The notes under the pieces were generated by a model. It was not told where the DNA came from. It worked only from the letters and a program-made list of their open reading frames with translations, and ran no database searches. A stretch of DNA of 64,000 nt from Vitrella brassicaformis CCMP3155 (Eukaryota > Protista > Chromerida): contig CDMY01000327.1 of the NCBI GenBank assembly GCA_001179505.1, forward strand, positions 1-64,000, written 5' to 3'. Below, piece by piece: positions 4,411-56,796 of the stretch (position 1 is the first letter of the stretch; every line of letters starts with the position of its first letter). A program made the translations under genes and the position numbers.

Positions 4411-5660
4411 GTGCACATCCAATGGTGTCTGTGAGTATAGCGGCTGCTCTTGGTGCTGCTGCTGTTCCTTGGTGTAGATGAAGAACTTCTGCGTGTAGGC
4501 GGTGCCTTTGTAGGTGGTCATCAGCGCGTCAACCACCTCATCACACACACAAGCACACACACACAGAGAGAGATGAGTGTGCGCATGGGCACACCAACAC
4601 GCGCACCGCCACACGAGTGCGTCCCCATGGTACCTTACCTACAGCTGGTCGTATCCTGCGTCTGTGCAGGTCCCTCGCCCGAAGAGGACGATCAGACTCT
4701 CGGGCAAACAGGTTTCCTGCGCACACACGCAATTGATGTGTGTGTGCAGACAGACAGACTGACACTACATCAATGCCCTCAAACACTGATGCCCACTCAT
4801 CCGCCCAAGGGACCATTAAGTGGCCATGAGGGTTCTCAGCCCGCCCCGTGAACAGAGGCCCACTGACCCGCCGAAGAGACCGCGAAGAGCTCATGAATTG
4901 GCCCAATGGACGGCTGCTCGATCCCTCCTGCTCCACTTGCTCGAGTGCCGGCAGTTGCCACCCCCTCTGGGCGAGTTCCTGGTGGTCAGCAGTGAGGCCG
5001 ACGACACGCGTGAGCGCATGCAGCGTCGGGGGAGGGCTGGGAAGAGACGGAAGGGGCGGTTCCTCGCGTGTAACGGTCCTCATGTCCCTGTTGGCCAGGT
5101 CGATTCCTCCGAAGCTGATGTTGCGCAGCGTCCCTCCTGGCATGCCGCCTGCCTGTCGCCCGGCAGCGTGTCCCTCTACCATGGCTACGAAGACGTCCAG
5201 ACACCATGCACACCACGACAGGCCGCTGGGGTAGCAAAGGGTGATGGACGTGAGAGCCGCGTGAGAAGCGCCCCAAGCTGACTGACGAGAGTGACGGGGA
5301 CTCGCTGCCACACCGACCGCTCCTCCTGGGTGCCGCAGCTGATGGTGAGGTGCGTGTGTTCCGGCGCGGCATGCTGGAAGATGTCCTTGGACAGCTGCAC
5401 CAGCAAGTAGAGGGGCAGGAAGGCCACAATACTAACGAGGAGGCCAGGCTGGGAAAACAAAAAGAAATGCCATCTATCTATGCCTTTGTGGCTGTCCCTC
5501 TTTGGTGTGGTGTGGTGCTCTTGCCTCGTCAGTGATCTGGTGGATCAGGTTCCTCTCCCTCTCTGCCCGTCGCTGCCGCTCCTCATCAGAACTGGCGGCA
5601 GCAGCAGCCGCGGCAGCTGGAGCAGCTGGGCGAGCCCTCTTGGCCTGCATGCAAACATAC
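4393..5660 (-). CDS. Lineage-specific hypothetical protein (F-box/LRR-like expanded family); boundaries uncertain
   Basis: Exon-like segments RRAERERNLIHQITDE, LVSIVAFLPLYLLVQLSKDIF…HTHLTISCGTQEERSVWQRVP and the long ORF 4541..5311 (LPSPPPTLHALTRVVGL…ELAQRGWQLPALEQVEQ), separated by microsatellite introns. Confidence 0.45.
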
Positions 5661-5991
5661 ATACATCCATCCATCCACGGCACACACAGACAGGTTGAAG
5701 GGGTGGCAGACACTCCAAGATCCTTAACGCCCGGTGTGCTCACCTTCCTTCCATCCATTACGTCCCACAAGCTACTGGGCCTGAAAGATCCATCCCTGAG
5801 TATTCATCAGCCCCATTCATTGTACAAAGCTGTTTTCAGGCGGGCCGCCTAGGGTGCGCCATGAAACCGCTGGGGAGATGAGGAAAACTGAAGGGAAGAG
5901 GAAAAAGGAGGATTGTGCGATGCAGGAGGCTTGTCTTGGAAGTGTGTGAGCTTGGGGTGGATCGTGGCTGTTTGTTTCGCGTTTTCTCTCG

Positions 5992-8166
5992 ATGGAGGGT
6001 TCGGTGACGTATCTGGCGTTCAACCAGGACTGCACGTGTCTCGCGGTGGGCACCCGTGGCGGCTTCTCCATCTATGGGTGTGATCCCTTCCAGCTGCTGT
6101 ACCGCGAGGAGGGCAGCTCCATCAGCGTCGTCGAGATGCTCTACTGCACCAGCCTCGTGGCCGTCGTGGGCTCGGGCGACACTCCCAGCAGCTCCTGCCG
6201 CCAGCTGACCCTCTACAACACCAAGGAGCGGAAGGCCATCATGCGCATGAACTTCAGCACCATGATCACGGCGGTCAGGATGAACCAGAAGCGGCTGGTG
6301 GTGCTGCTCAGCCAGAAGATACACTTCTTCGACCTCAAGAGCATGCATGCCCTCCACTGCATCGAGCGAATCGCACACACGAGCGTCGACCCGGCGCTTT
6401 GTGCGCTGTCTTCATCGCTCGACAGAGGTGAGATGATGAGACCACAGACATAGGCAGGTCATTAGCATATCCACGACGGCCTTGATGCGACATTTGTGTA
6501 TGTGTGGCTGGATCAGGTGTGTTGGCGACCCCCACTGTGTCGGACCCACCTGCAGGCCTGATATCGCTGCTCGACACCCACACACTGAAGCCCCTCGGGA
6601 ACACTCTGGCGCACCACTCCCCTCTCAAGGCCATCTGCCTCAACCAGAGCGGCACGCTGCTCGCATCGGCCTCGTCTAAGGTCGGTGGGCGAGCCCGATA
6701 CATGGAGGAAGGGATATGAGTGCACGAGTGGATGTTCCCGGCTTGTCTTTTGTTTATAGGGCACCGTTATTCGTGTGTTCTCTGTCCCAAGTTTGGATCG
6801 CATAGCAACTTTCAGAAGGTCAGCCAAAAGAGAGAGAGATAATCGTCGCCTGCATGACGGATGGATCTGCTTGTCTCGCTTGCTTTGCAGGGGCACAGTT
6901 GAGTGTTCCATCTACAGCCTGTCGTTTTCCCGCGACAACCTCTTCCTCACGGCCACGGGCTCATCCGGCACCATACACATCTTCAAGGCGCCAGACGAGG
7001 CCCTTCCCCCGACACCCAACGGCCGCGACCACACCTCCACACGGCCACCGATGCACCGCACAAGCGGCGGCTGGACCGACACCAGCAGCGGTGGCCCGAC
7101 CAGCTACGCCCGGCCGAATGGAGTGCATAACGGTGCTGCGGGGAGCAGCAGCAGCAGTAGGGCCAGTGACGATGCCAGTGGCGGTCCGTTTTTCCGCCCG
7201 TCCCCCTCCCCGCCCCCCATCTCATCCGCCCACCGGCACGACCGCACCGACCCCTCCACGTCTCCCCTGCTGTCGCTGGCATCGCAGGCGACGGCCGCAT
7301 CCATGGCAAGCGTCGCATCCATGGCCAGCGGGGTGGCCAACGCCGCCTCGACGACCTTCTCGACCACCCTGATGAACTATTTGCCGGCCAGCTGTAGGGA
7401 TCTCTTCGATGCGACGCGCTGCTTCGCGTGGACCAAACTGAAGACGCCACCTGAGTGAGCTAGTGGGGTTGGAAGTCGGGGAGAGAGAGGGAGAGAGAAC
7501 ACCGGACATCATTCTCCTCTTTGTCTGTGTCTGTGTGTGCCACCTTCCCTGATTTGTCTGTCAGTTTGCCGTCGATCGCTACGGTGAATTACAAGGCGGC
7601 CACGGGCATGTATGAGCTGGTGGTGGCGTGCATGTCGGGATGCGCCTACGTCTACGAGTGGAGTGCTGACACAGGCGGAGAATGCAGGTAGGGGAGAAAC
7701 CGAACCTGTCGAATCGCACCGCACACCACGGGGCGGCACTCATCCACGATAAGCTGCCCTGCCTGTGGTTATCGTTGACCTGGTGCTGCCTGCTGTGCTG
7801 TTCAGGTTGCGTGCTGAGCATTTCCTGCGTTCCTCCCTGCAATCGTACGACCTGTTCAACTCCTACCGGGCAGCCAACCACTCCTCGTCGCTCCCCTGCA
7901 GCCCCCCCGAGCACCCCACACACACAGCAGAAGATGAGCCACCTTCGGCTGCGCACCAGCCCCCTTCATCGCCACCACAGTGCCCCCCATCATCTGCAGT
8001 GCCACAGCAAGAGCAGCACCAGCAGCAGCATGCCCCGCCACCAGCGGGTGACAGGAGCGACAGCACGAGCACGAGCGACCACTCGAGCACCGATGCCGAT
8101 CTGATGGCTGCTGGGGCGGCGGCGGAGGGGATCCAGGGGATGCAGGGCAAGGGGGGTGTAACATAG
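5992..8166 (+). CDS. ATG18: Autophagy PROPPIN, ATG18/WIPI family WD40 propeller
   Basis: join(5992..6427,6517..6680,6760..6818,6891..7454,7565..7687,7806..8166); all junctions GT-AG and in frame. Motifs: LAFNQDCTCLAVGT…[87 protein letters not shown]. Confidence 0.95.
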
Positions 8167-24456: not shown

Positions 24457-27400
24457 CTACACTGGCGGCCTGGGCGTCCCCTCGTCCCCCCACCAGCCCC
24501 TTTTGACCAGGTTTAACACAGACCAGGCCCCCGACTTTCTCTGGCCGGCAGCCGGCTGTGTGTCTCCCCCAGTGCCCGCAACAGACGACCGACGTCTCTC
24601 ATCCTCTATTCGCCTTCTGCTGAGCTCAAACTCAGCGGCGGACGTGACCTGATCATCATCAATCTCATCCGGGTGGAAGGATGTTGACGAGTCGGAGGGG
24701 CGGGGGGGAGGGGCGCTGGCAGGGGTGGCCGAAGCATTCTGGGGTGACCCGCTGGCCCGGCGGGAGCTACGGCGAGGGGATGAGGTGGACGTGTGTGAGC
24801 GAGCAGGGAGAGTCTGGGACGCCTCAGGTGTACGCGCGTCGGCGCTGCCGACACCTCTGCCTCCTGTTGCCCGGTCTCCGCCTCGCCCTCTGCCAGCCGA
24901 TGTCTTCTGAGCATGGTGGCGGAGGAATCTGTTCCAATACGTGTCTCGCTCTTCCTGGTGCTCCAGGGCCTTCTTGCGGCGCTTGAGCCGCCAGTATGCG
25001 TACGCCGCTCCGACGAAGATGATGGCGAAGACAATACACAGGTAGAGCCAGACTGAGTTCTCGCCCGCCAGCAGCTCCTTCATGAATTCTGCGAATTGGT
25101 CTTCTGGGTCGCCGAGGGCGCTCTGCGGCCGGACGCACCGAAACTGGTTGAATGGAAGGTTGGGGTCCGTAGACTCCCACGTGCCGTTGTTGCACTTGGC
25201 GACGATGCCCGTGCCGCCGGCTACCGCGGACAGGTAGCCTCCGGCGCACGTCATGTCGAACTGACAACCGTGCTCGAAGGGTCGGGGTTCGAGGGGGCAC
25301 GTTTTGTTTTCAAACTTGTACGCTGGGCCGAGTGTCTTCTCGAGGGACTGGCAGTCGCCTGGCGAAGAGCATACAAGCATGCTGCATGAGGGTGTCAAGG
25401 GTTTGGCATTTACTCACTTCGGCAGTCGAGCTGGATTAGCGTCCATTGGCCGTCGAGGCACGTAATTTTGTTGGGGCTTGGCCCACCGACGCGAGAGGAG
25501 TTCTCCAACACGCAGATTAGCTCCCTCTCAGACCCGTGCTGCAGACCCGTCCCCCTCACCTTATAGCTGCCGAACACTCGCACTTTCCCCTCATCCCCCG
25601 GCGCAAGGAAAGATAACCCCGAGGTCGTCTCCGCCGGCAATTCGCCCGACTCGCCCGTGCAGCCGGTTCGACACACCAGTCCATTCTTGTTGTACAGCTT
25701 GCCGTTGTCGCACACCACTGTGTCTGGCTGTGCGCCCTTGGTCAGGTCATATCCAGTCTGACACTCAACAGAGCTCTCCGCCCCGTGCTGCAGCCCTGCT
25801 GCAGTAGCTGCGGCTGAGCCGATGCGGTATGCCTTACTGTATGCCTTGACATCTTGGGCACTGCAGCCTGTATTGGACAGCGATTCGGTGAGGTCGTCAA
25901 GGCCTATTGCGCCGCGGGGTGGCAAGGGCGGAGCACCCCGTGTGTTGATGAATGTGGGGGATGAGAAGCGGGAGTGCAGCACCATGCCGCCTGGGCGATC
26001 GGTGTCTATCTTGACGCTGATCGGCTGTTGTGGAGAGAGGCGGAGGGACTCGAGAGACACGTCACGGGCGAGACGCCTATCAACAGCCGCTGCCAGAGCG
26101 CCACTCATGCCCTGACAAGAATATCCGTCAAACAAAATATGTGCCGCATGTCGCGTCTCAGCTTACCTGCTGTTCAATGTATTCCCTCAGGAACACACCC
26201 ATGGTGTCGCGTTCTGGCGGGAGGTCCAGCTCCACCTCGACAGCAGCACGCCTCGCCACGTCCGTTGTGTCGGGCCGCACCACTATCCGCGACACGTCTG
26301 TACGGACAGTGCCGATCTCCCACGCAACGGCGTCCCTCAGGGCCTCCAGCAGGCCGTCGACCGTCGATGATGGTATGTTCAAGGCAGCAGCATCGATGTT
26401 TTCGAGCATGAGGTCAATGGAGAGGATCGAGGCAGTCTGGGCCGAGCCGTCGAATGCAGTGGAGCAGGTACGATCCAGAGACATGAGGCACTTCTGCTCC
26501 ACGTACGGGATGGTCCTGGGTACGTAAAAAAGCGGATGAGGATTGGTGCAGAAAGTACTTATGTTTTCACCAATGCCTTATTCACCTCTCAGCGATCCAT
26601 GGAGTGCGATCAGCCTCCTCAAATAGTGACGTCTGTTCGCTGTCCTTAGCTAGCGCCTCCCGCAGCACTTCCAGGGAGGCGGCAAAGCAGCAGCCCCTGT
26701 TGGTGACGCCATCCACCAGCTGAGTGCGGCATTCATTAGCACTGCAAACGAAGGCCGAGTCGTAAGGAAGACACTTCTCTTCCAGGTTGCCCACAGCATT
26801 CCGCAATGTGGTGGGAAACATGATCTGGAAGAGACAGTCCCCGCCGTCATACACGCAGTCCTCGTGGTAGCAGACAGCATCGCACTGGCCGTCACCGATG
26901 TAAGATTTCGGGCAGATGTCCGAGCAGTTAGTCAGCCGGGAGGTGTTCACTGCCGGCTGGGGAGACAGTTTGGTGGATGTGAGGGACGACGTGGGGCTGG
27001 AGACGTCAGATGGCGCGTCTGTGAAGAGGTATGATCGACAGAGATTGCTATCGGTGTTCTGGCTGCATGCGAAACGGGCATAGCCTAACAGCAGCTGTCC
27101 CAAGGCAAAGTGGTAAGGGCTCTCCATCTCGTCACCGAGGGTCGCGACGGCCGACCCCATTTGAGACACAACAGGCAGAAGACACCTGAATGAGACACAC
27201 CAGTGTATCCACTCGCAAAAGCCGCCCGGCATCTGCTTATGTGTCTACGCATTGCATACTTGGACTTGCATGGATTGGAAACGAGTTTGGGATTGACAAT
27301 GGGATTCTCCTCGGCCACCAGTTGCGCCTCCTGCTCGCAGTAGTCGCCCTCGACTCGCACACACACCACGTCCACCAACTCCTGTCGAAACGGCCCGTAG

Positions 27401-30400
27401 TAGTTCGGAACCACAGCACGCAACGTCTCCCGAGTCAGGAAAGTGTCAGGCTCCTCTGTTGGTATCGGGCCGCGAAGCCCTTCCAGGTCGATCGGCGACT
27501 CTCCAGGCTCCCTTGGCCCCGCAAGTGCAAATAGCCTGCTGACCGCACTCAAGTAGCGCGCGTTCGATCGGAAGCAGCTGTTTGCGTGACAGATAGTCAG
27601 CAGCTGGTCGGGTGCCTTTCCTGCCAGGGCCTGGATGGACATGTCGGGCCGCTGCTTGACTATGTCTCCAAAGCAATACGGCGATGTCTCCCCTGTCGAT
27701 GTTGGCTCGGTGGCGCACCAAGCCTCCAGCACGTCGAGCAATGGCCGACGAGCAGTACAGTCTGCTGGCAGGGCGACGGCCGCCCTCATCAGCTGGTCCC
27801 GCTCGCTGGAACACGAGCCCGTACAGAATGACTGGACGCGGTCTCTGTCCATCGCCCCGCGATAGAGACGGTCCCCACATACGGAATAGATGTAGTCCCG
27901 CGTTTGACGGATGATGTCGCAACACGGTGTCGTAGTGTTACTGCACTCGGGCGGGAAAGCGATCTCCGGGCGGGACAGGCCAATCTTTGTAAGTAGTTTC
28001 CACGTTTGTTTTGGCGGATTGCCTTGTCCGGGCCAGGACCCCTCTGCTCTTGATTTGGGGATGTTTCGCCTTGCAGGTTTGTCGTACTCGACAGTCACAG
28101 TACTCATGATGGCGGATGCTGAGAGGGCTGGCGCAGCGAATGTCTCACCAGGTATCGTGACCCCTGCCAACTTCTGCACGAGCGCGTCGCGGTATCTGGT
28201 GTCAAAGCTGGTGTTGATGAACTTCTGGTCCATCCAGTCATTGGTCTGGCTGACCGTCAGGCCAGGCAGCTCGACGTAGAAGTTGACCTGCAGGAACTCT
28301 CTCCCATCCTCCTGCTCCTCTTCCTCCTGGAGCAGTCGCGCCACCGCTGCCGTGATGGTGTTGCAGCCGGCAGGGAGGGACACCTCGCCCCTGTCGATTG
28401 CGTCCTGTAGGGCATTGGGGATGAAGGGCGAGCCCTCCGTGCACTTGCCACATGAGACGGGACACGCGTCCGAAATGAGGGTCTCCGGGGGGACACCTTC
28501 AGGAATAGTCGCGCCAGGACTGAAAGTGTTGACGAGCTGCTCCAGTGTGCTAGGACACTGTTGGAGGGAGAATAGGAGGTCACAAGTGACAGCCAGGTCA
28601 GGTCCTGCAGCCTCCTGCGCAAGCCGCTCAAATGTGGCGCTGTTGGCACACACGCCAGTAACGAGGGGCTTCAAATCGGCCGGTATCTCGACGTCATCAA
28701 GTGAGCAGGCCGCAAGGGGCGGCCCCCCTTCAGTAGGAGCCGCAATGACGGCGAGGCTGCTGGCGATGGCGCTGATCTGAACAGCCGCGTTTGTGGTCGT
28801 TCCCAATGTGGACACCAATGCGGCCTGAGATACGACAACAGCGCAGCACACGTAAAGTGTCGAAGCGTCTTTCCTGGATCCTCACATGAATTGCAGGAAT
28901 CGTTGTTTCATCGAAGTTCTCAGCTCCCCGCAGCCTCAGGATGCCTTCAAACTTGGCCACCATCTCCTCAGTACAGCCAAGGTCAGGGGCCGTGAACTGC
29001 CCATCAGTACACGTCACGAAGGCGTACCCGCCGAACCCCTCTTTGGCCACATAGCCGTCAGCACACGACAGGACGCGCCCTCCTCCGTGTCTGACCAGCC
29101 CCTGCTTCCGAAGGGGGTCTTGCTCCTCAGAGCTTGGGACCGTCAGAACGAAGCCGCTTCCAAGCTGCTTGAGCCATTCGATGGAGCACGTCCGCTTCAG
29201 GTCGCAGGATGGACATGAACCTCCACAGTCAACGCCTTGCTCGTCGCCGTTTTGTATGGCGTCCGTACACTGCGGTTTGCCACAGAGTCCACATGACTTG
29301 GGGCACGTGTCTCGAACTCGGGCAGTCGGGGGCAAGTTGACCGGCGGGGGCTCGTCCGAGAGGTCCTTCAGGAGGGTATCGCAGCCCTGGGCCCCAATAC
29401 GGATGAAGAGATCACACGAGTACCCCAAGGCTTCCACCATCGGGTTGTCCTTGCAGCCTGCCACACAGGAAAACAAGCCAGTGACGGCAGACCCCATCAG
29501 CTCATCAACCTACACGCCCATTTGGTACTTACCGGCGTCTCCTGGCGATGGCGCTGGCTGGTCTGCAGCAGGTGTGCAGGCCTTGCACGTCCGGTTGCAC
29601 GCATCGTTGAGTGTCCAATCAGGGGGCACCCCAGCAGGCAGACGCTGCCCAGACGGCAGCAAGTCCTTCAGCGGTGTGCCACACCCATTGATGGCAAACT
29701 GTAGCAACAAGTCGCACGGAAAGCCCAGCTGAGTTGTCAACGGGTCATCCACACACGTCTCTGCCACTGGCGGGGGCGTCGTCTGTGGCGCTAGGGTGAA
29801 GCCGGGCGGGACCGTGACCGCTGCCGAGCAGTCCTTGCATGTCTTCGGGCATGCATTTTTGACAAGGATTTCTTCAGGGATGGACGACGGCCACTCCATA
29901 CCAGGTGCATTCTCTCTCTGCACATCAATAAGTCTGTCGCTGCAGTTTCCGACGAAGACCAGAATGTCGCAGTTGATGCCCTCAAACTGGCTGACAAGGG
30001 GGCTGTCCTCGCAATCCAACGAGTCCTCATACCCTGGCAGAGGAGTGCCGGTCGGGGCAGGGGTGACTGGGATACAGCCTGTTGGCGTCGGCAGGTTGGC
30101 ATACACGATGGGAGGGAAGAACGTCTCGCCCTCCTCACAGAGGCCGCAGGTGAGCGGACAGGCATCTGCCACCGTGGTCTCGGGCGGGACATTCGGTGGG
30201 AGGGTCGTGTCACCTACTACTGCTGCAAACTTCTCCAGAAGCTCCCCGAAAGTGATGGTACAGTCCTGCCCATTGAGGTTGTACAGGACTGAGCAGCTGA
30301 GCGCCAGATCTCCCCCGACTTCTGCGACAGCATTGCTGTCCTCACACACGCCCGAGAAGAGCCCCTTGTACTCGTCAGGGATGTCGTCGATCGAGATTTC

Positions 30401-33027
30401 GGGCAGCGCGCACTCGCCACCCGTAGGCGCCGCCGTTGTCTCCCCTGGCGCGAGAGTGGTGACCTCGACTCCACTGTACGCCGCCGCCTCCTCGAAGGGC
30501 ACACATGCCGGCACTTGTGGGATGCCGTTGACAACCTCGAGATCGGCGCCCTCGCCAACAAAGTTGCCGTCGCTGAGACATGTCAGGGTGATCTGCTCGA
30601 CGTCGAAATAGCCCAAGAATCGCTGCGAGGAGTCTGGGCATTTGATGGTGTAGTTCTGGCCCTCATTGATGAAGCGGCTAATGGGGGTGACGCCTCTGCG
30701 TGTCGACACAGGGATCTCGGGCCCCTCACAGTCGCCCTGACAGTCGCCCTCATCAAAGTTGCAGTCTCCTGCAACATTGCATGGCGTCTCACAGTTGAGG
30801 TTCCCCAGCTCCCACAACTCACAACCGGACGCGCACTCTGAAGAATACAAACAATAGTCGGGTATGGCCCATATGCGATCTCTTTATTGTGAGTCCTAAC
30901 ATGTACCTTCACACAGGCCGCAGGTTCTCCTGCATGCGTCCTGTATGCGCGCCTCCGGCGGTACGCTTTCCGGGAAATCCAGCCCGAATTGTTTTGCAAG
31001 ATCCATCAGGAATTCGGCGCACTCGGCCGCAAGGAGCATCTGCTCGCATGTAAAGCCGCCAGACAGTGACGCGACGTCGGGATCGTCTTCACACTGTGTT
31101 CCAGCTGAGGAGCGAAAAGTCAGACGTGAGCAGTCGACAAGTCGAGGAGCTCGAGCGTACGGCATCTGAGTTGGTTGCAGACTTGTCGCTCCTTGAGACT
31201 CGAGGGGCAGGGTCGCCCGCCCTCTTCGGGTGGTGTCTGCACACATGCATATGCGATGCATATCCGATGCATACACCCACGTGCTACCAATCGACCTTGC
31301 TGTTTCCTCCTCGCCGACCTGAATTTGTCTCGTTCGGACCTGCTGTCCATAGCTTCCGCTGGCAAAGCAGGTGGCGGAGCATTCACTCCAGTCAGACCAC
31401 GCAGACACGACGCAGTCACGGGGAGGAGCTGAATGAATGACAGGACGAAGAATACAAGTACAGAAGGAGAGTCGTGTGGCATGCCCGTGACCCACCGCAA
31501 GTGTCAGTGTTGCACGCGAGTGTTTCCTCGAATGGCGGACACGGCAGGCCACCGGCACACGGAGGAGTCTGAGAAAAAAGGAAAACGCTCGCAGATGATA
31601 GATCAGTGTCCAGTGTGTGGACTCGATGTTTTACCGATACGGTTCTTGTTCTGTTTTTCGAGCCCCCTCCGCAGGCCTTTGTGCACGTTGACCAAGCGCT
31701 CCATTGCGTCATCACACATTCAGAGAAAGTACAATCAGTCGCTGACGTGATATGATCAGAACACAGAAAAGCGTGAGACAGCGAGGGCGGTGGGACAAAT
31801 ATTCGATTCGTGTCTCTCACCGCAGCTTGTGAGTAGGCATTCTCTTGTGTCTTCGAGAGGGTCGCAAGACGCTCCCTCGAATTTAGCTTCGCTCACAACG
31901 CTTCTTGTCCGCCGTTCAGTGCCCAGGTCACATGTGTTAGAGCACAGACTCCACTCACCCCACTCGCTAGGAACACAATCCACAGCTGAGACATAACAAA
32001 AGGAAGCTCTTAAGCGCTGATGCGTCTGTGTGTTCTTCTCATGTGTTTCTCCCTTCAAGTGTCTCTCCTCACGGCAAGGAACATCCTCGTTGCAATCTTC
32101 TCGCTCTTGGAGCAGAGGACATGCACGGCCATTGTTCCTCGGAAGCTCCTGACGGACGAAAACAGAGGTAAGCCGATAGCTCGTCCCTTTAAATGATCAT
32201 TCGTACGCGTATGTCTCGCTCTCTGAATGCGCTGCCGGGTCCGTTGCAGGAGACCGAGCATTCACTCCACTCGTTCCACTCGCTGACCACACAGTCCTTG
32301 TCTGACGATAAGAAAGATGACGGACTCGAAGACAGACGGAATGTTCCTTCTCAATGTCTGCGTACCGAAACAGTCTCCTCCGTCGAACTGACAGTCCGGA
32401 TTGTAGCACTCCTCCTCACACTTGCCGTTGTCGAGGAAATACAGCGCACAACCGGGCGCGCATGCTGTAGTGGAAAACAGCCGAAACACCTTGTGTTGTT
32501 CGTGGACAGCATATCTATCTTGCTTTTGTCTCACTTCTGCACAGTCCGCAGCTAGCCGGGCATACGTCTGCCACCCGTGCATTCTGCGGCACACCCTCGG
32601 GCAAGGAAGAGGGCGCAACCTCCACGCCAGGAAGCTCAACATCAATATTCAAGAGGTCCCTCAACAGCTCAGAGCACCCCAGCGGTCCAAGATTGGTGGC
32701 AAGAACTGCACAACTCTGGCCCAGCTCCTGCACCTCGGGCATATCCTTGCATGCTATTTCTCCGCCAGTGGAACCGCCCGTGCCGCCACCGGTCGTGTCC
32801 TTGGGTTCCTGTTGAGCAATCAGGTTAGGATCTGAGAAGACGGGAGGAAAGCCAGGAACAGGCGGCGCAGGGGGCGCAGGGGGCGCAGGAGGAGCAGGAG
32901 GGACCGGGAAGAGGCCGCCGAAGGGATCACCTCCTCCGAAAAGGCCCTGGGCGCTCGAGAGAGCCACAAGGGACAGGAAAATTGCCGCAAGCTGAACAAG
33001 ACGAGTAGCAAACCTTCCCTCGTGCAT
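24457..33027 (-). CDS. Large type I membrane adhesin A, TRAP-C2/MIC14/MIC15-like: SP, about 7 ShKT-like, 3 LNR, 4 TSP1, 5 Sushi/CCP, 2 SEA-like, Cys-rich helical region, TM, tail
   Basis: Signal MHEGRFATRLVQLAAIFLSLVALSSAQ; CKDMPEV…VADVCPASCGLC; CAPGCALYFLDNGKCEEECYNPDCQFDGGDC; TSP1 CVPSEWGEWSLCSNTCDLGTERRTR; CTDAIQNGDEQGVDCGGSCPSC; TM VWLYLCIVFAIIFVGAAYAYW; stop at 24457. Many GT-AG introns. Confidence 0.85.
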
Positions 33028-46455: not shown

Positions 46456-49400
46456 ATGGCGGGCCGCAACCAGGCAAACCAACCGCAGCTGAGCCGAGGG
46501 TCTGAGAGAGCCGCCTACACACATCGACGGTGGAGAGTCGTGCTCCAGCTGCTGTTCTTGCTGCTCCTGGTGGTGCCGCTATCCGCTCAGCCTGATCTTC
46601 CCCTCCTCGGCGAGGGAGGGCTGGCAGATGTGTTCGGCAATCAGGGCGGCATCAAGCGAGACCGCCGCCCCGGCAATGGCCTCTTCGGCAGACGAAACGG
46701 CAACGCTGGCAATGATGACATCGGTGCCTTGGCTGTGGGCGGCGAAGAGGAGGACGATGAGGACACCGGAGGTGGGATTAGCAGCAGCAGCCGTCCTGGC
46801 GGCCTCTTGGGGGGCCGTCCGAACAACGTCAACAAGGCGCCGCCTCGCTCGAATGGGTTCGTGTGCATGGACCGACCCGAGGTGGAGGAGATGGGATCGA
46901 GCTGTCGGCAGATAGCCAAGAATCTCCCAGGCATCGGATGCCGTCAACTGGTGCGCGACCTGCCGCTGCCAAACGACAAGGAGCTGCCGAGAGAGCTGCC
47001 GCCCAACGCGCGAGTCGCCGACATCTGCCCCGAGACGTGCGGACTGTGCAGTGGTGTGTATACATGGATTTCGCATAGTGTCACTCACTGACTCACTCAC
47101 TCACTCACTCGCACCCGATGAACGACCCTTTTGTGTGCGTGCTCCGTGCGTGCAGAGTGTGCTGACGGCTGTGCGCTGTGGTTTCTGGGCAACGGTCTGT
47201 GTGACGAGAAGTGCTTCAATGTGGGCTGCCAGTTCGACGGAGGAGACTGCTGGAGTGAGCGGCGAGTGACGCGATGTTAGTCAAGTGATAAGCATGATGG
47301 CGTCTGTGCCGTTTGATTCAGGCCGCGACTGCACTGTGGGCGAGTGGAGCGACTGGGGCGAATGCAGCGTATCGTGCGCTGGACCCGGCACACAAACGAG
47401 AAGCAGAAAAGTCAAGGTGAAGGGCAATGGACAGACGACACAGCCAGCGACGGTGTGAGTGGTTGTTTCTGCAGGAAGAGGCCCGGAATGGCGGCGCTGA
47501 GTGTGATGACTTATCAGAGGTCAAATCAGGCTGCAACAAAGACGTCCCATGCCGTAAGCCAGACAATCAATCAATCAATCAGCACAAGCCGAATCCCAAG
47601 AAAACACACAATCACCGGTCATTTTTGCTTCTTTCTTTCTGCCTGTCTCTTCTCGTGTGAATCCAGCCGAGAATTGTCGTGTTGGCGAGTGGACAGAGTG
47701 GAGCGAGTGTTCCAAGACCTGCGGCGACGGCAAGCAGCTCCGCAACCGTGATGTCCGCAAGCCTCCTGTGGGCGGCGGAGAGGAGTGCCCACCCCTCACA
47801 GACACACGCAAGTGCCTCAGCACCCTCTGTGGTACGACGTGGAAGAGAACAGAGAGGTATATGGACAGAGTCGACGGATACGTGGCATGTCCCGTCTGCG
47901 TACAGCTGTCGATTGCCTGACGACTGAGTGGAGCGAGTGGAGCTCATGCTCAACCACATGTGGCGGAGGGCTGCGCAACAGAAAACGAAGCGTGCTGGTA
48001 GGCTGCCGGGGGGAGGGTGAATGAATGATGGCATACCAAGCATGTTTGTCATTGTCATTATATGTCAGACGGAGCCTGCGTATGGTGGTGAGAATTGCCC
48101 CATCCTCGAGGAAGAGGAGGGTTGCAACACCGAAGCATGCCGTAAGGCCATCCATTGAAGACCCACGAGCACATGGACACTTGCTGCACGGATTGACTTC
48201 TGTGTGTGCAGCTGAGGGCAGCGACGACTGCACAGCTGAAGACGGATGCAGTAAGCCGCCATGAAGCAAGAGACGTTCTTACACAACCGTCTGCACGTGT
48301 GCCGCATTTCATTCATCAGAGGTCGATTGTAAGGTGTCTTCGTGGGGTCAGTGGAGCAGCTGCACAAAGGTGTGCGAAGTGGGTGAGATCACACGGTCGC
48401 GAGCCATCACCACCAAGCCCAAGAATGGAGGCGCCAAGTGCCCGTCCCTCAAGCAGTCACGGGCGTGCCTCGTGTCTGATGACCCGTCATGCGGTACCAC
48501 CACCAGCACCACATAGCCACATGGCGCTGTTGCTACATGTTGTCTCCGCTTTCGTGCTCGATGTTCCTTCAGCGACGGACTGCAAGGTCAGCGAGTGGAG
48601 CGACTGGAGCAGCTGCAGCGCCACATGCGATGGAGGCACAAAATCGAGAGAGAGACGCGTGGAGGTCAGCCAGTCGCCTGCTGTTGATTGGAAAGTTGGT
48701 GAGATACATCCAGTCTGTCCCTTATCAGGTCGAGCCTCACTCAGGCGGCAAGCCGTGTCCCGACCTCAAAGACAGCGAGGCCTGCGGCACTGAGCCATGC
48801 GGTGAGCGAAGATGACGATTCGAGACGCACTTCCCTATGTATGTGTCACTCACCAGCTGAGCCGACGGACTGTGAGGTGTCTGATTGGACTGAATGGGGT
48901 AAATGCAACTCCCCCGAGCGTACCTGCGGCGGAGGAGTACATAAACGCACACGAAAGATCCTTGTAAGCACAGCACGCAACGACAGACAGTCAGTCTGCC
49001 TAGTAGCATGATTTCATTGCTTCCTGTCTGTATCAGGCTCCTCCAAGTGACGGTGGGCGCGTCTGCCCCTCTTCACTGGAAGAGATGAAGGGATGCAACC
49101 TATCCAGATGCCGTGAGCAACACACACTCGCATCCTAACTGCCGCACATCCATCCGCCTTGCCTCGTTCATTCCCTGTTCAGCGGGCGCCAAGTGTGAGG
49201 ACAACCCCGACGTGCCCGAGTTCACCGGCGGCGGCACATGCGAAATCCTCAAGATGCAGGGATGCGAAGAATCGCTCAAGAACATCGCCAAGAAATTCAA
49301 CAGGCCCTTCCCCAGCAACGTGCCACCCGAGACAAGAGTGCGCGACGCATGCCCCAAGACATGTGGCTTTTGTGAAGGTATTCACACAGCGACACATTCA

Positions 49401-52400
49401 CGCTAGAAATGCACTGTCTCCCTTGCACATGTCATTCGTGTGTTGTGTTTGGGCGTCCCCCCATCAGAGTGCTCTCCCGGCTGCGAGTTGCGTGATCTGG
49501 GCAACACCGTCTGTGAGAAACCGTGCGACAACGAGGCCTGCAAGTTCGACGAGGGCGACTGCCGCGGCGAGTGCAAGTTGCCTGAGATGCCCGTGTCTGT
49601 CAAGTTCTCCCCCATCCGCATGTACATCGACGCCGGCGACATGGTCACCGTCACGTGCCCGGAGTCATCGCTGAGATTTCTTGACTTCCCGGAAGAGACC
49701 AAACTGGAGCTTACCTGCCAGTCAGGGGGAGCGATCGACGATGGCGGCTTCGGCTTGAACGAGACAAACGGCACTCTCATGATCCCTCCGTGCGTCCCCG
49801 CCGCGGAGGCCACACCAGTCGGTGCGTTGGGAGCTGGGGGAGGCGCTGATTTGGAGCCGACGGAGCCCCCTCCGCCTGACGACGAGCCTATGACAAATCC
49901 CCCGGCTGCCGGCGGGTCTAAGGGTCCATCGACGGTCTTCAATGGCACAGAGCGGTACTGCGAGGACGCCCCCGAGGTGAAGGCGCTGTCGGGCTACGAC
50001 TGCAAGGAGCTGACCACCAAGCTCAACCTCCCCTGTGCGGCCCAGCTCAAGGACGTGGGCTTCAAGCCACCGCCAGGCATCCCCGACACAGCAACGGTGG
50101 ACAAGTTCTGTCCGGCCACATGCGGCAAGTGCGAGGCCACCTGCGCTGATGAGTGTCTCGACTGGTTCCTCGCCAATGCGCACTGCGATCCTGCATGCGA
50201 CAATGCCGACTGCAAGTACGACGAGGGAGACTGCAAGAAGGGTGGGAGTGGCGGCGCCAGCGGGGGTGGCGGCGCCAGCGGGGGTGACGGCGCTGTCTCG
50301 GCTCAAGGAGGGGAGAGCACCACTGGACCGCCCGTGGAAGACATTGACTGCGATATTCTGGACAACCTCGACGAGATCGAGATCCCCGAGGAGTACTCGA
50401 AGCTCGTCACTGGCGTGTGCGAGGACAGCCCCGCTGTCACGGACCTGGGCTACACGTGCGCCCTCTTCAAGACCATCTCCAAAGACGACTGCGACATGAC
50501 ATTCGGGGAGCTGCTCAAGACCATCGGCAGCGGCGACACCGTGCCAACCCTGCCACCCACTGTGCCTGAGGAGACCAAGATCGGCGACGCCTGCCCCGTC
50601 ACGTGCGAGCTGTGCAAGAAGGGCGACACGTTCCTGCCCGACATCGTGCGAGACAAGCTCGGCTGCACGTCGACGGGCAAGCCCAAGCCGACACCGAGCA
50701 AGAAACCGGGCGGAGGGTGCCGGGCCGAGGACATATCTGAGAAGGACATCCCCAAGGAGTACCGGTCGATCGTCACGGGCAAGTGCGAGGACAGCAAGAT
50801 GGTGGAGGAGCTCGGCTACAACTGCAACCTGTTCAAAACCATCGCAAAAGAAGACTGCACGAAGGACTTCGACACGCTGCTCGAGACCGTCGGAGAGGGC
50901 GCCGACGTGCCCACTCTGCCTCCCAAGGTCCCCGGCACCACCACCGTTGCGGATGCATGCCCAGTGACGTGCGGTGAGTGCACTGAAGGCGAGCCCTTCC
51001 TCCCGCCCATTGTCCGCAAGACCCTCGGCTGCGAAGACGAGCCCAGCGAGCCCAGCGAGCCCAAGGACGACGAGAAGCCGACAGAGGCCCCTGGGGAGGC
51101 GCCTGGGGACTGTGAGGACAGCCCTCTCGTGTCGTCCTTCGACATCACGTGTGAGGTCCTGTTGGTCGTTGGCACGTGCAACGACACGATCTACGAGCTG
51201 CAGAAGAAGAACAAGCCTGACGCCACCTTCCCCTCGTCCATTCCCAAGGACACCCTCGTCAAGAACGCATGTCCCAAGAGCTGCAACGACTGCTCGGCGG
51301 TGATCCCGCTGCCTGACGACTTCTCACTTGACGCCGCAGACAAGCCGCCGACAGAGACGGCGGCGCCGTGCGCTGACGACCCCCTGGTCAACCAACTGGG
51401 CTACACGTGCGACCTGCTCAAGCAGTTTTCGACGGATGGGTGCAGGAGCAAGCTGCAGGACATGCTGCCCGAGGGGCAGAGGCTGCCTGATGGTGTGCCC
51501 AAGGGCTGGACGCTGGAGGACGCATGCCCGAGGACGTGCGGAGACTGCCCTGGCGCACCGGCACCCGACACAGCAGACGCAAGTGAGTGCCCATGGCACA
51601 AGACACAAAGGGCTTGGGATGTCGAAGCTCTCTCTTTCATTGGTCTATCTCATCTATGTGTGTGCGCAGGCTGTCAGGACAACCCCATGGTTGAGAGCCT
51701 CGGCTATTCGTGCGCGCGGTTCATCGAAGTGGGAGGCCGCGGCTGCGACACACTTCTGGTTGACCTGGCCGACGGTCAGACGCCCATTGACCTACCACCG
51801 ACGGCCAAGGTCAAGGACACGTGTCCCAAATCGTGCGGTGTGTGCGGCGGCCCCTCGTGCATTGACGGCCAGCAGAATGGCAAGGAAGAGGGGGTAGACT
51901 GCGGCGGCAACTGCAAGCCATGCAGCAAGAAGGCCGGCTGTTCCATCGAGAGCCTCAAGCAGCTGGGCACGGGAGTGGCCATCAGCCGCGCCTCTGGTGG
52001 TGCAGCAGTGGAGGGGCCGCCTGGCAGAGTGGCTCACGGCACCCGCCGTGTGCTGACCTGCTTGGAGGGCTACGAGGAAGTGGGTACTGGGTGGGGCTAC
52101 GACGTTGTGACGTGTCTCGACGGCAAGTTCACGGCTCCTCGGCTGCGGTGTGAGGAGGCGAAGGCAACTGTGTATGAAGGGCGGCTCAAGATCTACGGTG
52201 CTGAGGACTTCGACGAAGTCACCATTCCATATATACACGTGAGTGGGAGGGGAGGGGAGGGGAAGGGGACGCGCCCAGAGAAGCAAGCCAGCCTACTTGC
52301 AAGCCCTTCTGTCCTTTTGTGTGCTGTGCATGTGTGTGATCAGGAGGCCCTTCGTGACGCCATGAAGCTGCAGAAGTCCGAGGTGCAGCTGGGCGCAGTG

Positions 52401-55400: not shown

Positions 55401-56796
55401 ACTCCCTCAAGTCATCCGTGCGGGCTTTCAAACACACCGAGGAGAGCTCGGTGTCGTGCGCCGACGGCTATTCGGCGACGCGCGGCAAGCAGCCCGACAC
55501 TCTGCTGTGCGACAACGGCAAGCTGATCGTCAAGAATGGCCTCCTGTGTCGGCAGATGTGCAGTGGAGAGTCGCCCGAGCTGCCCTTCAACGCCACGACT
55601 CCTCCGAGGGCGCCCTTCTTGGCCCCTAACGAGGCCGGCAACGTCAGCACCGAGGGCACGGTTCGCGAGGGTGGTGGCTATCGGGCAGTGGGTGAAGGGT
55701 ACATCCACGGGTCGTCGCGGGAGGTGTCTTGCTTGAAGGGTTACACAGCTATCGAGGGCAAGGCCCCCGAGACCATCGGGTGCGTCGATGGACAGTGGCA
55801 GGAGCTCAGACTCGACTGCAGAGGTGCGCAGAAATGGTCGCAAACACACGGGGCACGCAGTCGAATTCTGTTTCCGTCGTGTCTCCGCCTTGTTCACTGT
55901 CTGCAGCCGACTGCACGGAGCTGTCTCTTGGTGACGGCTATCGCGTCGAGGGCAGTGGCCTCACCCATGGAGACACCCGCAAGATCAAGTGCTCGCCCGG
56001 CTACTTCTCGACGAAGCTTGTCGCTGCCTCCACACACACACTGTCTGTGACGGTGACGTGCCAGGACGGCTCTTGGGCACCGCCGCAGCCCATCAAGTGC
56101 GTCAAGCCCGACACGACGACGAAAACACCCAGACAGGGCTTTTTCGTCTTCCTGAGGGACCTGTTTAGCGGCAACGCGGCCGTCGGCATCGTTGTGCTCA
56201 TCGTCTTTTGCGTGGTCATGGTCATCGCGTCGCTGCTCGCCTGGAAGTACTACTTCAAGGACAAGTCCATTCGCAACCACGAGGAGCGAGAGAAGAGGAT
56301 CCAGCAGCGACACGGCACCACACCAGTGACAAGAGACGGCACCAACAATCCATCAGCAGACCTGAGGGCCGCCGGGAGCAAGACCAAGGCGCCACACAAT
56401 GCTGAGGATGACTCGCTCACTCATGCCAGTGGGGGCCCCGAGACAGACCTCCTGTCCAGTGAGGGGCGGGAGAACAATAGCGACACCAGCAGCCTCGGCC
56501 CCAGCTCTGTCCGGATGGATGAGGGATCACGGTCCACCTTGCCGAACACACGGGGCGCATCATCAAACAACAAGGCGGGGCCCGACCGTCACGTGCCCTG
56601 GGCACCTCCCAGGACGGCCACTGAGGGAGGGGCGACACTCACAGACACCGACGACGACCTGACGTCGGCGGCTCACTTCGCGAGGGAGAGGAGACGGCAC
56701 TCATGGGGACAAGACGGCACGAGCTCTGTGGGGTCGGAGTGGACAGAGTCGAGCAGTTTGGCGGATCGACACAGGCCGAGGAGGCCGCCCGTCTAG
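46456..56796 (+). CDS. Large type I membrane adhesin B, paralog of A: SP, about 9 ShKT-like, 4 LNR, 6 TSP1, 5 Sushi/CCP, 2 SEA-like, Cys-rich helical region, TM, tail
   Basis: Signal WRVVLQLLFLLLLVVPLSAQ; CMDRPEV…VADICPETCGLC; six WxxWxxC TSP1 repeats at 47.3-49.1 kb; long exons 49.47-54.0 kb; CIDGQQNGKEEGVDCGGNCKPC; TM AAVGIVVLIVFCVVMVIASLLAW; ends RRPPV*. Confidence 0.87.

What the first reader, a model, noticed from the sequence alone, without database searches (positions are those of the whole stretch)
24457..33027. TRAP-C2/MIC15-like invasion-type adhesin in a presumably free-living alveolate (gene A)
The domain order is SP, ShKT-like, LNR, TSP1 array, ShKT-like, LNR, Sushi, ShKT-like array, Sushi, …, LNR, Sushi x3, TM. 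From memory, this matches the architecture annotated for Cryptosporidium TRAP-C2 and related Toxoplasma microneme proteins MIC14/MIC15, with MIC15 reported in the CRMP complex needed for rhoptry discharge. The TSP1 repeats keep WxxWxxC C-mannosylation sites. A full-length homolog in a chromerid would mean this host-sensing module predates parasitism, perhaps serving zoospore attachment or extrusome firing.
Basis: partly seen in the sequence, partly recalled or inferred. Interest (0 to 1): 0.75.

Follow-up and report, generated by a model that had tools for sequence, protein, structure and literature searches.

The report
Algal relative of parasite TRAP-C2
A free-living photosynthetic cousin of malaria-type parasites carries an intact gene for a very large surface protein of the same family as Cryptosporidium TRAP-C2 (CpTSP2); this is real but already noted in print, and I found no support for a link to the Toxoplasma MIC15 rhoptry-discharge factor.

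Summary
On the minus strand at 24457-33027 lies a 17-exon gene (all GT-AG, introns 55-87 nt, 2492 codons).

The genome is Vitrella brassicaformis. The gene is collinear over its whole length with Cryptosporidium TRAP-C2 (= CpTSP2, cgd5_3420). Its non-generic central exon finds only that family, in Cryptosporidium, Eimeria/Cyclospora, gregarines, Cardiosporidium and Chromera.

It is a co-orthologue, not a one-to-one orthologue. A better-conserved paralogue (gene B) lies at 46456-56796 in the same window, and two more lie elsewhere in the genome.

The MIC14/MIC15/CRMP link is not supported. Published MIC15 architecture differs, its homologues are reported only from Coccidia, and TRAP-C2's published best Toxoplasma hit is TGME49_223480. 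I had no MIC14/15 sequence to compare directly.

Chromerid orthologues of CpTSP2 were already stated by Boisard et al. 2022. Function is unknown for the whole family. A surface adhesion or recognition receptor is my inference. Interest is low to moderate.

The parts
24457..33027 (-). Gene A, whole coding span: 17 exons, 2492 codons plus stop
   Evidence: Stop-free frames; splice junctions; exon translations without stops
32535..33027 (-). Exon 1: ATG, signal peptide (33027-32944), Gly/Pro-rich linker, ShKT-like repeat 1 (32539-32751)
   Evidence: Sequence. 45% identity to residues 165-231 of C. canis TRAP-C2. Repeat definition
32366..32464 (-). Exon 2: LNR 1
   Evidence: Pfam PF00066, 38.1 bits. 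66% identity to TRAP-C2 residues 233-264
32073..32301 (-). Exons 3-4 (32207-32301, 32073-32148): TSP1 no. 1, WxxWxxC kept, split by a 58-nt phase-0 intron
   Evidence: Pfam TSP1; junction J2
31821..31985 (-). Exon 5: TSP1 no. 2 (complete in one exon)
   Evidence: Pfam PF19028, 66.1 bits
31496..31741 (-). Exons 6-7 (31635-31741, 31496-31568): TSP1 no. 3
   Evidence: Pfam; junction J5
31161..31428 (-). Exons 8-9 (31319-31428, 31161-31236): TSP1 no. 4
   Evidence: Pfam; junction J7
30907..31104 (-). Exon 10: ShKT-like repeat 2
   Evidence: Sub-threshold Pfam ShK; repeat alignment A2
29533..30837 (-). Exon 11: LNR 2 (30737-30837), Sushi-like module, ShKT-like repeats 3-5
   Evidence: Pfam Notch, 18.1 bits, below threshold. 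51% identity to TRAP-C2 LNR 1222-1255. Repeats. The Sushi-like module has no Pfam hit
28886..29457 (-). Exon 12: ShKT-like repeat 6, a small conserved Cys-rich motif ending in DCGG..C..C (29192-29281), Sushi-like module
   Evidence: The motif is conserved in the family consensus of alignment A1. 38% identity over 190 aa to P0001 and to the Eimeria protein P0051
27260..28824 (-). Exon 13: ShKT-like repeat 7 (28441-28656), an alpha/beta region, and the single-copy family-specific Cys-rich helical core (about 27262-27975)
   Evidence: Full HMMER scan; one copy per protein in all family members; helical in the AF2 model of homologue P0013
26586..27185 (-). Exon 14: pre-LNR helices, LNR 3 (26834-26929), post-LNR Cys-rich helical stretch
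   Evidence: Pfam Notch, 32.3 bits. 31% identity over 195 aa to P0001
26167..26515 (-). Exon 15: conserved EQ.C....DRTC motif, then a SEA-like alpha/beta domain
   Evidence: Alignment A1. The homologous domain of P0013 (residues 753-860) matches SorCS2 (Z 8.2), EpCAM (Z 7.2) and SEA domains (Z 6.0-6.3)
25418..26111 (-). Exon 16: linker and two Sushi-like modules
   Evidence: Pfam Sushi, 22.2 bits in the whole open frame and 17.9 bits for the first module alone. Collinear with TRAP-C2 residues 3392-3579
24457..25358 (-). Exon 17: third Sushi-like module, membrane span (24991-25053), basic juxtamembrane stretch, 177-residue Ser/Arg/Pro-rich tail, stop (24457-24459)
   Evidence: Sequence; Pfam Sushi, 15.8 bits; membrane span and juxtamembrane stretch conserved with gene B

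Best explanation
Identity (shown). Gene A is an intact Vitrella brassicaformis gene for a type I membrane glycoprotein of about 2492 residues. It belongs to the CpTSP2/TRAP-C2 family, whose members include C. parvum cgd5_3420, Porospora PgTSP2, uncharacterised Eimeria/Cyclospora proteins and Chromera Cvel_8866. The evidence is the exon structure, the domain order, whole-length collinearity with TRAP-C2, a single-copy family-specific core shared only with this family, and the family tree. It is one of at least four Vitrella paralogues that together are sister to the apicomplexan clade. It is the faster-evolving member of a convergently oriented (tail-to-tail) pair with gene B in the same window.

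Function (inferred).
- The protein probably sits in the plasma membrane.
- Its outward end would carry C-mannosylated TSP1 repeats, with ShKT-like and LNR modules, for binding extracellular ligands.
- These would be held away from the membrane by a stalk: the Cys-rich helical core, an LNR, a SEA-like domain and three Sushi-like modules.
- The conserved juxtamembrane segment and long tail would couple it to the cell interior.
- In a free-living alga the likely uses are attachment or recognition of surfaces or partner cells. Examples are zoospore settlement, cell contacts inside the sporangium, and contact with the coral holobiont.

I put family membership at about 0.9 and the adhesion/recognition role at about 0.5. 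No member of this family has a tested function.
For: - Gene model.
- Domains: Pfam; ShKT-like fold.
- Family-specific similarity: phmmer of the central open frame against 1.84 billion representatives gave 20 hits, best 3.3e-25. All named hits with the core are Apicomplexa or Chromera. A few weaker hits, including another Vitrella protein, match only the ShKT-like part.
- Naming: Cryptosporidium members are called 'TRAP-C2 extracellular protein'. CpTSP2, cgd5_3420 and TRAP-C2 all map to UniProt Q5CRC0.
- Collinearity: exons 1-17 map in order onto TRAP-C2 residues 165-3579.
- Reverse search: Cyclospora P0002 against the whole Vitrella genome returns gene B and gene A first (1.8e-27 and 2.6e-26).
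- Tree: chromerids against apicomplexans 97/97; genes A and B sisters 99/96.
- Glycosylation: WxxWxxC is present in all four TSP1 (sequence). A DPY19 C-mannosyltransferase gene is in the genome (120.5 bits). CpTSP2 WxxW motifs are C-mannosylated in sporozoites by mass spectrometry (PMC10034466).
- Prior literature: Boisard et al. 2022 state that CpTSP2 has orthologues in chromerids.
Against: - No expression, localisation or binding data exist for the Vitrella gene.
- No member of the family has a tested function, so adhesion is inferred from domain types alone.
- Gene A has the long branch of the A/B pair (1.43 against 0.55) and fewer TSP1 repeats. It could be diverging in function or decaying.
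- Three of the five Sushi-like modules and all ShKT-like repeats fall below Pfam thresholds.
- The exon model has no RNA support. In-frame introns inside the large exons would go unnoticed.
- The full-length spliced protein was never searched or folded.
Confidence: 0.75

Rival explanations
1. First reader's functional reading. Gene A is the chromerid counterpart of Toxoplasma MIC15/MIC14 (RDF1/2). It would work with CRMP proteins as a contact sensor that triggers discharge of rhoptry-like or extrusome organelles.
For: - It is a type I membrane protein with TSP1 repeats, as MIC15 is.
- CRMPs are reported as numerous in Chromera (PMC9815656).
- Nd proteins are described as conserved across Alveolata (PMC9218915).
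Against: - MIC15 architecture differs: H-type lectin, two ~300-aa Cys-rich repeats, three TSP1 next to the membrane, and no LNR or Sushi.
- MIC14/15 homologues are reported only from Coccidia.
- No H-lectin was found in any exon.
- The full scan with the central exon found no MIC14/15 proteins. Its Cyclospora hit is a gene distinct from the listed Cyclospora MIC14 and MIC15.
- TRAP-C2's published best Toxoplasma hit is TGME49_223480.
- In gene A the TSP1 array is N-terminal, not membrane-proximal.
Confidence: 0.04
2. A Notch-like receptor gated by force or by a protease. The membrane-proximal LNR plus SEA-like domain would act like the Notch negative regulatory region, hiding a cleavage site until a ligand pulls on the TSP1/ShKT end.
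For: - An LNR is followed by a SEA-like alpha/beta domain close to the membrane in every family member.
- The top Foldseek rows for the homologue model are the Notch1 and Notch2 NRR.
Against: - Those Foldseek rows are not significant (E 0.3-1.1, rmsd 15-17 A).
- VIA-align does not list any NRR among its 50 rows (lowest Z shown 4.0).
- There is one LNR, not three.
- About 100 helical residues separate it from the SEA-like domain.
- Three Sushi-like modules lie between that domain and the membrane.
Confidence: 0.1
3. A structural component of a wall or matrix (sporangium, cyst or zoospore coat) rather than a receptor.
For: - TRAP-C2 has one peptide identification from oocyst-wall proteomics and low expression in the table of PMC13095730.
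- Vitrella has other wall-type Cys-rich proteins, such as OWP arrays (PMC4501334).
Against: - A membrane span with a conserved juxtamembrane segment and a long tail is kept in both paralogues and across the family. A purely structural matrix protein would not need this.
- CpTSP2 is detected in sporozoites.
Confidence: 0.12
4. Gene A is a decaying duplicate of gene B with no function of its own.
For: - Long branch.
- Lower scores than gene B against every apicomplexan homologue.
- Four TSP1 repeats, against at least five in gene B.
Against: - All 17 exons are open.
- All 16 introns have GT-AG, and the junctions preserve the frame.
- The cysteine frameworks of the repeats and the core are intact.
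Confidence: 0.05

Closest known systems
Cryptosporidium TRAP-C2 = CpTSP2 (C. parvum cgd5_3420, UniProt Q5CRC0; here P0028 from C. hominis and P0029/P0031 from C. canis)
   Same: - Same order from end to end: SP, ShKT-like, LNR, TSP1 array, ShKT-like, LNR, Sushi-like, ShKT-like array, Cys-rich helical core, LNR, EQ.C..DRTC motif with SEA-like domain, Sushi-like x3, TM.
- WxxW motifs, shown to be C-mannosylated in CpTSP2.
   Different: - About 2492 aa against about 3870 aa.
- Four TSP1 repeats, against at least 10 Pfam TSP1 stretches in the C. xiaoi member.
- Three LNR against six Pfam LNR stretches in that member.
- 21-29% identity in the specific regions.
- Co-orthologue (one of at least four Vitrella copies), not a one-to-one orthologue.
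- The host organism is a free-living alga.
Porospora PgTSP2 (P0035) and gregarine, Eimeria/Cyclospora and Cardiosporidium members
   Same: Same family core, present once per protein. Boisard et al. 2022 call PgTSP2 a CpTSP2 orthologue with orthologues in chromerids and coccidia.
   Different: They fall on the apicomplexan side of the 97/97 split. Most carry 14-16 TSP1 repeats.
Chromera velia Cvel_8866 (P0020)
   Same: Chromerid member with the core, LNRs, Sushi-like modules and TM. It groups with the Vitrella copies. It is listed under Notch and CCP in the supplement of Woo et al. 2015.
   Different: Pfam finds four LNR and no TSP1 in it. Gene A keeps the TSP1 array, as the apicomplexan members do.
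Toxoplasma TGME49_223480 (Sushi domain protein; 16 TSP1, Sushi, Notch-type domain, TM; 4752 aa)
   Same: Same set of domain types (PMC9218915 Table 1). It is the published best Toxoplasma BLAST hit of TRAP-C2, at 1e-176.
   Different: - Not retrieved here by any search, so I could not test whether it keeps the family core.
- Its BLAST score may rest largely on TSP1 repeats.
Toxoplasma MIC15/MIC14 (RDF1/RDF2), partners of CRMPa/b in rhoptry discharge
   Same: Type I membrane proteins with TSP1 repeats.
   Different: - H-type lectin, two ~300-aa Cys-rich repeats, and TSP1 next to the membrane.
- No LNR or Sushi.
- Restricted to Coccidia.
- No evidence of specific similarity here.
TRAP/MIC2 gliding adhesins
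   Same: TSP1 repeats, single membrane span, cytoplasmic tail with Trp near the C-terminus.
   Different: - No vWA/I domain.
- The tail is long (177 aa) and basic/Ser-rich, not short and acidic.
- ROM4 was not found in chromerids according to PMC9250747.

Membership tests
CpTSP2 / TRAP-C2 family | N-terminal order: signal peptide, ShKT-like, LNR, TSP1 array | tested here: met
   exon 1 maps to TRAP-C2 residues 165-231 (45% identity), exon 2 to 233-264 (66% identity), and exons 3-9 fall within 299-1157.
CpTSP2 / TRAP-C2 family | Single-copy Cys-rich helical core between the last ShKT-like repeat and the last LNR | tested here: met
   The full scan found only this family. The core is present once and in the same position in all members. 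Near-invariant cysteines appear in alignment A1.
CpTSP2 / TRAP-C2 family | Membrane-proximal order: LNR, Cys-rich helices, EQ.C..DRTC motif with SEA-like domain, Sushi-like x3, TM | tested here: met
   Exons 14-17 are collinear with TRAP-C2 residues 2995-3579. The SEA-like fold was shown in the model of homologue P0013, not of gene A itself.
CpTSP2 / TRAP-C2 family | Reciprocal best match | tested here: met
   Forward. Reverse, Cyclospora member against the whole Vitrella genome: gene B 1.8e-27, gene A 2.6e-26, other loci 5e-9 or weaker. Gene A is second to its own paralogue.
CpTSP2 / TRAP-C2 family | Placement in the family tree | tested here: met
   Chromerid copies form one side of a 97/97 branch against all apicomplexan members. 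Genes A and B are sisters, 99/96 (277 columns of the core only).
CpTSP2 / TRAP-C2 family | C-mannosylated WxxW in TSP1 repeats | not testable with these tools
   The motif is present in all four repeats (sequence). DPY19 is encoded in the genome. The modification itself needs mass spectrometry.
MIC14/MIC15 (RDF1/2) | H-type lectin domain (MIC15) | tested here: not met
   No such Pfam hit in any exon at E up to 0.1.
MIC14/MIC15 (RDF1/2) | TSP1 repeats in the C-terminal half next to the TM; two ~300-aa Cys-rich N-terminal repeats | tested here: not met
   In gene A the TSP1 array lies in exons 3-9, near the N-terminus, and Sushi-like modules adjoin the TM. MIC15 layout is taken from PMC9218915.
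MIC14/MIC15 (RDF1/2) | Direct sequence similarity outside TSP1 | not tested
   No MIC14/15 sequence could be obtained with the tools. Indirect evidence only: no such protein appeared among the hits, and the Cyclospora hit differs from the MIC14/15 accessions.
MIC14/MIC15 (RDF1/2) | Complex with CRMPa/b | not testable with these tools
   Needs biochemistry. CRMP and Nd6/Nd9 were not searched in this genome, because no query sequence or family model was available.
TRAP/MIC2 adhesins | vWA (I) domain, and a short acidic tail with subterminal Trp | tested here: not met
   No vWA in Pfam. The tail is 177 aa and basic/Ser-rich, though two Trp lie 10-11 residues from the end (sequence).
Notch negative regulatory region | LNR modules packed on a SEA-like heterodimerisation domain | tested here: inconclusive
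   Foldseek's top rows are Notch NRRs, but at E 0.3-1.1. No NRR appears in the VIA-align lists. There is one LNR only, and the model coordinates could not be inspected.

The most novel reading that the evidence does not exclude
The module conserved from chromerids to Cryptosporidium (Cys-rich helical core, LNR, SEA-like domain next to the membrane) might be a switch gated by force or by a protease. It would be analogous to the Notch regulatory region. That would make this family an ancient contact-sensing receptor that existed before parasitism and was later put to use at the host interface.
Probability: 0.1. Interest if true: 0.7.

Novelty: already known. Interest (0 to 1): 0.27.

Why it matters
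The gene confirms, with an explicit exon model and a whole-length comparison, that a large apicomplexan surface protein family (CpTSP2/TRAP-C2) was present in the free-living ancestor shared with chromerids. That includes its TSP1 array.

This point is already in the literature in brief form (Boisard et al. 2022; Woo et al. 2015), so it is not a discovery.

What this work adds is modest:
- a definition of the single-copy core that marks the family;
- support for the ShKT-like and SEA-like folds;
- the finding that Vitrella holds at least four copies, including a convergently oriented (tail-to-tail) pair;
- a correction, in that the family should not be equated with MIC14/MIC15 or tied to the CRMP rhoptry-discharge complex.

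The family still has no tested function in any organism. The free-living alga could therefore be a convenient place to ask what it does apart from a host.

Tried and rejected
1. MIC15 link. No MIC14/15 sequence could be fetched. Word-limited searches from Cyclospora and Eimeria reached only Eimeriidae, and a search from Cryptosporidium reached only Cryptosporidium. A blank for Toxoplasma is therefore uninformative. The rejection rests on the literature and on the full scan.
2. PDB sequence search with the two largest exons found nothing relevant.
3. ESM Atlas search with the core gave best scores of 0.76-0.78, within the chance range.
4. Foldseek on the 860-aa homologue model gave no match at E<=0.001. 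The helical core has no convincing structural relative (Z about 5, which is normal for helical proteins).
5. The Notch NRR-like reading was not supported by VIA-align.
6. Pfam does not recognise the ShKT-like repeats above threshold, nor three of the five Sushi-like modules.
7. A literature search on the bare gene number returned only noise. Templeton & Pain 2016 and Deng et al. 2002 are not held, so whether they name the chromerid genes is unknown.
8. Earlier notes of this scan hold nothing on this gene.
9. The joined, spliced protein was deliberately not built, searched or folded. All searches used single exons by reference, so no full-length search or fold of gene A exists.
10. CRMP and Nd6/Nd9 were not searched in the genome, for lack of query sequences or family models.

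Full report
**What is there.**

The window is eukaryotic and intron-rich, with about 58% G+C. Its assembly has 72,700,666 bases in 1064 contigs.

On the minus strand between 33027 and 24457, a chain of stop-free frames carries recognisable modules. I fixed the exon borders by requiring three things: GT-AG, frame continuity, and agreement with the domain consensus and with homologues. The result is 17 exons:
- 33027-32535, 32464-32366, 32301-32207, 32148-32073, 31985-31821, 31741-31635;
- 31568-31496, 31428-31319, 31236-31161, 31104-30907, 30837-29533, 29457-28886;
- 28824-27260, 27185-26586, 26515-26167, 26111-25418, 25358-24460.

The stop codon is at 24459-24457. Introns are 55-87 nt long. 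The lengths sum to 7476 nt, or 2492 codons. No exon has an internal stop. The eight introns that separate the N-terminal modules (ShKT-like, LNR, TSP1), plus two further on, are in phase 1. The three introns inside TSP1 repeats are in phase 0.

Every search and fold below used single exons, or homologues, by reference.

**Domains.**

- Pfam gives two LNR above threshold and a third at 18.1 bits.
- It gives four TSP1 repeats, each with WxxWxxC.
- It gives one Sushi at threshold (22.2 bits, whole open frame); tested singly, two modules score 17.9 and 15.8 bits.
- The other Sushi-like modules have the cysteine pattern but no Pfam hit.

The seven ShKT-like repeats have about 58-72 residues and six invariant cysteines, and end in C...C..C. 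They reach only 13.6-15.3 bits against Pfam ShK. An AlphaFold model of one repeat was built on an alignment of the 16 repeats of genes A and B, and has pLDDT 81. Only six of 48,161 PDB representatives align to it at Z>=2. Five of the six are ShK/ShKT peptides or the Cys-rich domain of a CRISP toxin (Z 2.1-2.7, 33-37 residues aligned, 21-35% identity). The Z values are small because the domain is small, but the list is specific. The label 'ShKT-like' is fair.

The signal peptide, the membrane span (24991-25053) and the 177-residue tail are read from the sequence.

**What family it belongs to.**

I took the largest open frame (28881-27088, 598 aa). It holds one ShKT-like repeat and about 450 residues that Pfam does not recognise. 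I scanned all 1.84 billion representatives with HMMER. Twenty proteins passed E 0.001. The best scored 3.3e-25 at 35% identity. Most of the matches fall in the unrecognised part (query 303-545).

The named hits that carry the core are:
- Cryptosporidium xiaoi and C. bovis TSP1 proteins of about 3830 aa;
- a Cyclospora TSP1 protein;
- a Cardiosporidium 'sushi domain' protein;
- Gregarina, Selenidium and Porospora proteins;
- Chromera Cvel_8866.

A few weaker named hits, from Siedleckia and from another Vitrella protein, match only the ShKT-like part.

The close Cryptosporidium relatives of these hits carry the names 'TRAP-C2 extracellular protein' (C. canis) and 'TSP1/LNR repeat containing protein' (C. 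hominis). Two papers tie the names together. CpTSP2 is UniProt Q5CRC0 (PMC10034466). cgd5_3420, 'TRAP-C2 extracellular protein', is also Q5CRC0 (PMC13095730).

Exon-by-exon BLASTP shows that gene A maps in order onto TRAP-C2, from residue 165 to residue 3579. An HMM of the central region finds the core once per protein, always between the last ShKT-like repeat and the last LNR. In the reverse direction, the Cyclospora member lacks the TSP1 array and so makes a specific query. Searched against the whole Vitrella genome, it returns this window first. Membership of the CpTSP2/TRAP-C2 family is therefore well supported.

**Paralogues and tree.**

The same window holds a second copy, gene B, on the plus strand at about 46456-56796. 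It is 38% identical to gene A over the central region. It scores higher than gene A against every apicomplexan homologue. It shares at least one intron position with gene A.

Two more distant copies with the core lie on contigs C376 and C61.

A maximum-likelihood tree of the core (25 sequences, 277 columns) puts all chromerid copies, plus one unnamed sequence from a public read assembly, on one side of a 97/97 branch. All apicomplexan members are on the other side. Genes A and B are sisters (99/96), and gene A has the longer branch. Gene A is thus a co-orthologue of TRAP-C2 that arose by duplication on the chromerid side.

Chromera's member has four LNR but no TSP1 by Pfam. The Vitrella copies are therefore the ones that show the TSP1 array is ancestral.

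**The MIC15 claim.**

PMC9218915 describes MIC15 as having a leader peptide, an H-type lectin, two ~300-aa Cys-rich repeats, three TSP1 in the C-terminal half, a TM and a tail. MIC14 is similar but lacks the lectin. BLASTP homologues were found only in Coccidia.

Gene A differs on each point:
- It has no H-lectin.
- Its TSP1 array is near the N-terminus.
- Its membrane-proximal part is made of Sushi-like modules.

The Cyclospora protein found (XP_026194468) is neither of the Cyclospora MIC14/MIC15 accessions listed in that paper. The same paper's Table 1 lists a different Toxoplasma protein, TGME49_223480, with 16 TSP1, Sushi, a Notch-type domain and a TM. PMC13095730 gives that protein as TRAP-C2's best Toxoplasma hit, at 1e-176.

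I could not fetch MIC14/15 or TGME49_223480. The word-limited searches reached only Eimeriidae or Cryptosporidium. The rejection of the MIC15 link is therefore indirect, though consistent across sources. With it falls the proposed tie to the CRMP complex and rhoptry discharge. I did not search the genome for CRMP or Nd6/Nd9, for lack of queries.

**Structure and likely working.**

I folded an 860-aa homologue fragment (P0013). In one piece it covers the stretch that gene A spreads over exons 13-15. The alignment included those exons. The model has pLDDT 69 and pTM 0.66, with 75-93 in the ordered parts.

- The core is a disulfide-rich helical domain with no convincing structural relative.
- The last LNR is followed by more helices, and then by an alpha/beta domain.
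- That domain matches membrane-proximal ectodomains: SorCS2 (Z 8.2), EpCAM and TROP2 (Z 6.2-7.2), and SEA domains of MUC16 and a transmembrane protease (Z 6.0-6.3). About 90 residues align in each case. I call it SEA-like, with moderate confidence.
- Foldseek's top rows were Notch NRRs, but at E 0.3-1.1 with large rmsd. VIA-align did not list them. A Notch-like gated switch remains only a possibility.

The genome encodes DPY19 and has weak O-fucosyltransferase matches. CpTSP2's WxxW motifs are C-mannosylated in sporozoites. C-mannosylation of gene A's repeats is therefore plausible.

[quoted passage not shown] I found no functional study of any member.

My working model is a plasma-membrane adhesion or recognition receptor. 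Glycosylated TSP1/ShKT/LNR modules would be held on a rigid stalk. This is inferred from domain types, not shown.

**Novelty.**

- Boisard et al. [quoted passage not shown]
- Woo et al. 2015 list Cvel_8866 and a Vitrella gene under the Notch and Sushi domains. They also state that chromerids have proteins with micronemal-type architectures.

The central message of the finding is therefore already known. The exciting part, MIC15/CRMP, is unsupported. What is added here is detail: the exon model, the family-defining core, fold support for the ShKT-like and SEA-like domains, the four Vitrella copies and their tree.

Noticed in passing
window 46456-56796 (+): Gene B is a paralogue of gene A, convergently oriented (the two 3' ends face each other), about 13 kb from gene A. 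It has the same architecture but at least five TSP1 repeats, nine ShKT-like repeats and an extra ShKT-like+LNR unit. It is 38% identical to gene A over the central region and is closer to the apicomplexan homologues. A 1536-aa open frame (49407-54014) covers most of its ectodomain.
   Followed up: partly
G000:C376 about 362,000-368,000 (L007, L010) and G000:C61 about 4,800-7,300 (L009): Two further Vitrella loci carry the family-specific core with an LNR and post-LNR region. They are sisters to each other in the tree (100/99). Their full architecture was not worked out.
   Followed up: partly
window 32535-30837 (introns of exons 1-11): The eight introns between the N-terminal modules (ShKT-like, LNR, TSP1) are in phase 1, and those inside TSP1 repeats are in phase 0. 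This is the pattern expected of exon shuffling. The intron after the NPC.S motif at the end of exon 13 is at the same place in gene B.
   Followed up: partly
window 29192-29281 (-): A small Cys-rich motif ending in DCGG..C..C lies between ShKT-like repeat 6 and a Sushi-like module. It is conserved in gene B, in Chromera Cvel_8866 and in the family consensus. It has no Pfam match.
   Followed up: no
P0020 (Chromera Cvel_8866): The Chromera family member has four LNR and no TSP1 by Pfam. The TSP1 array was therefore either lost in Chromera or missed in that gene model.
   Followed up: no
G000:C510:51607-55213 (-): A multi-exon DPY19-type C-mannosyltransferase gene (best exon 120.5 bits) is present in Vitrella. 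Weak O-fucosyltransferase matches lie on C244.
   Followed up: no
window 24460-24990 and 56270-56793: The tails of genes A and B both end in RPPV. Both contain an acidic DDD..TSAA.F motif followed by an Arg-rich stretch. BLAST did not align these parts, so the resemblance is by eye only.
   Followed up: no
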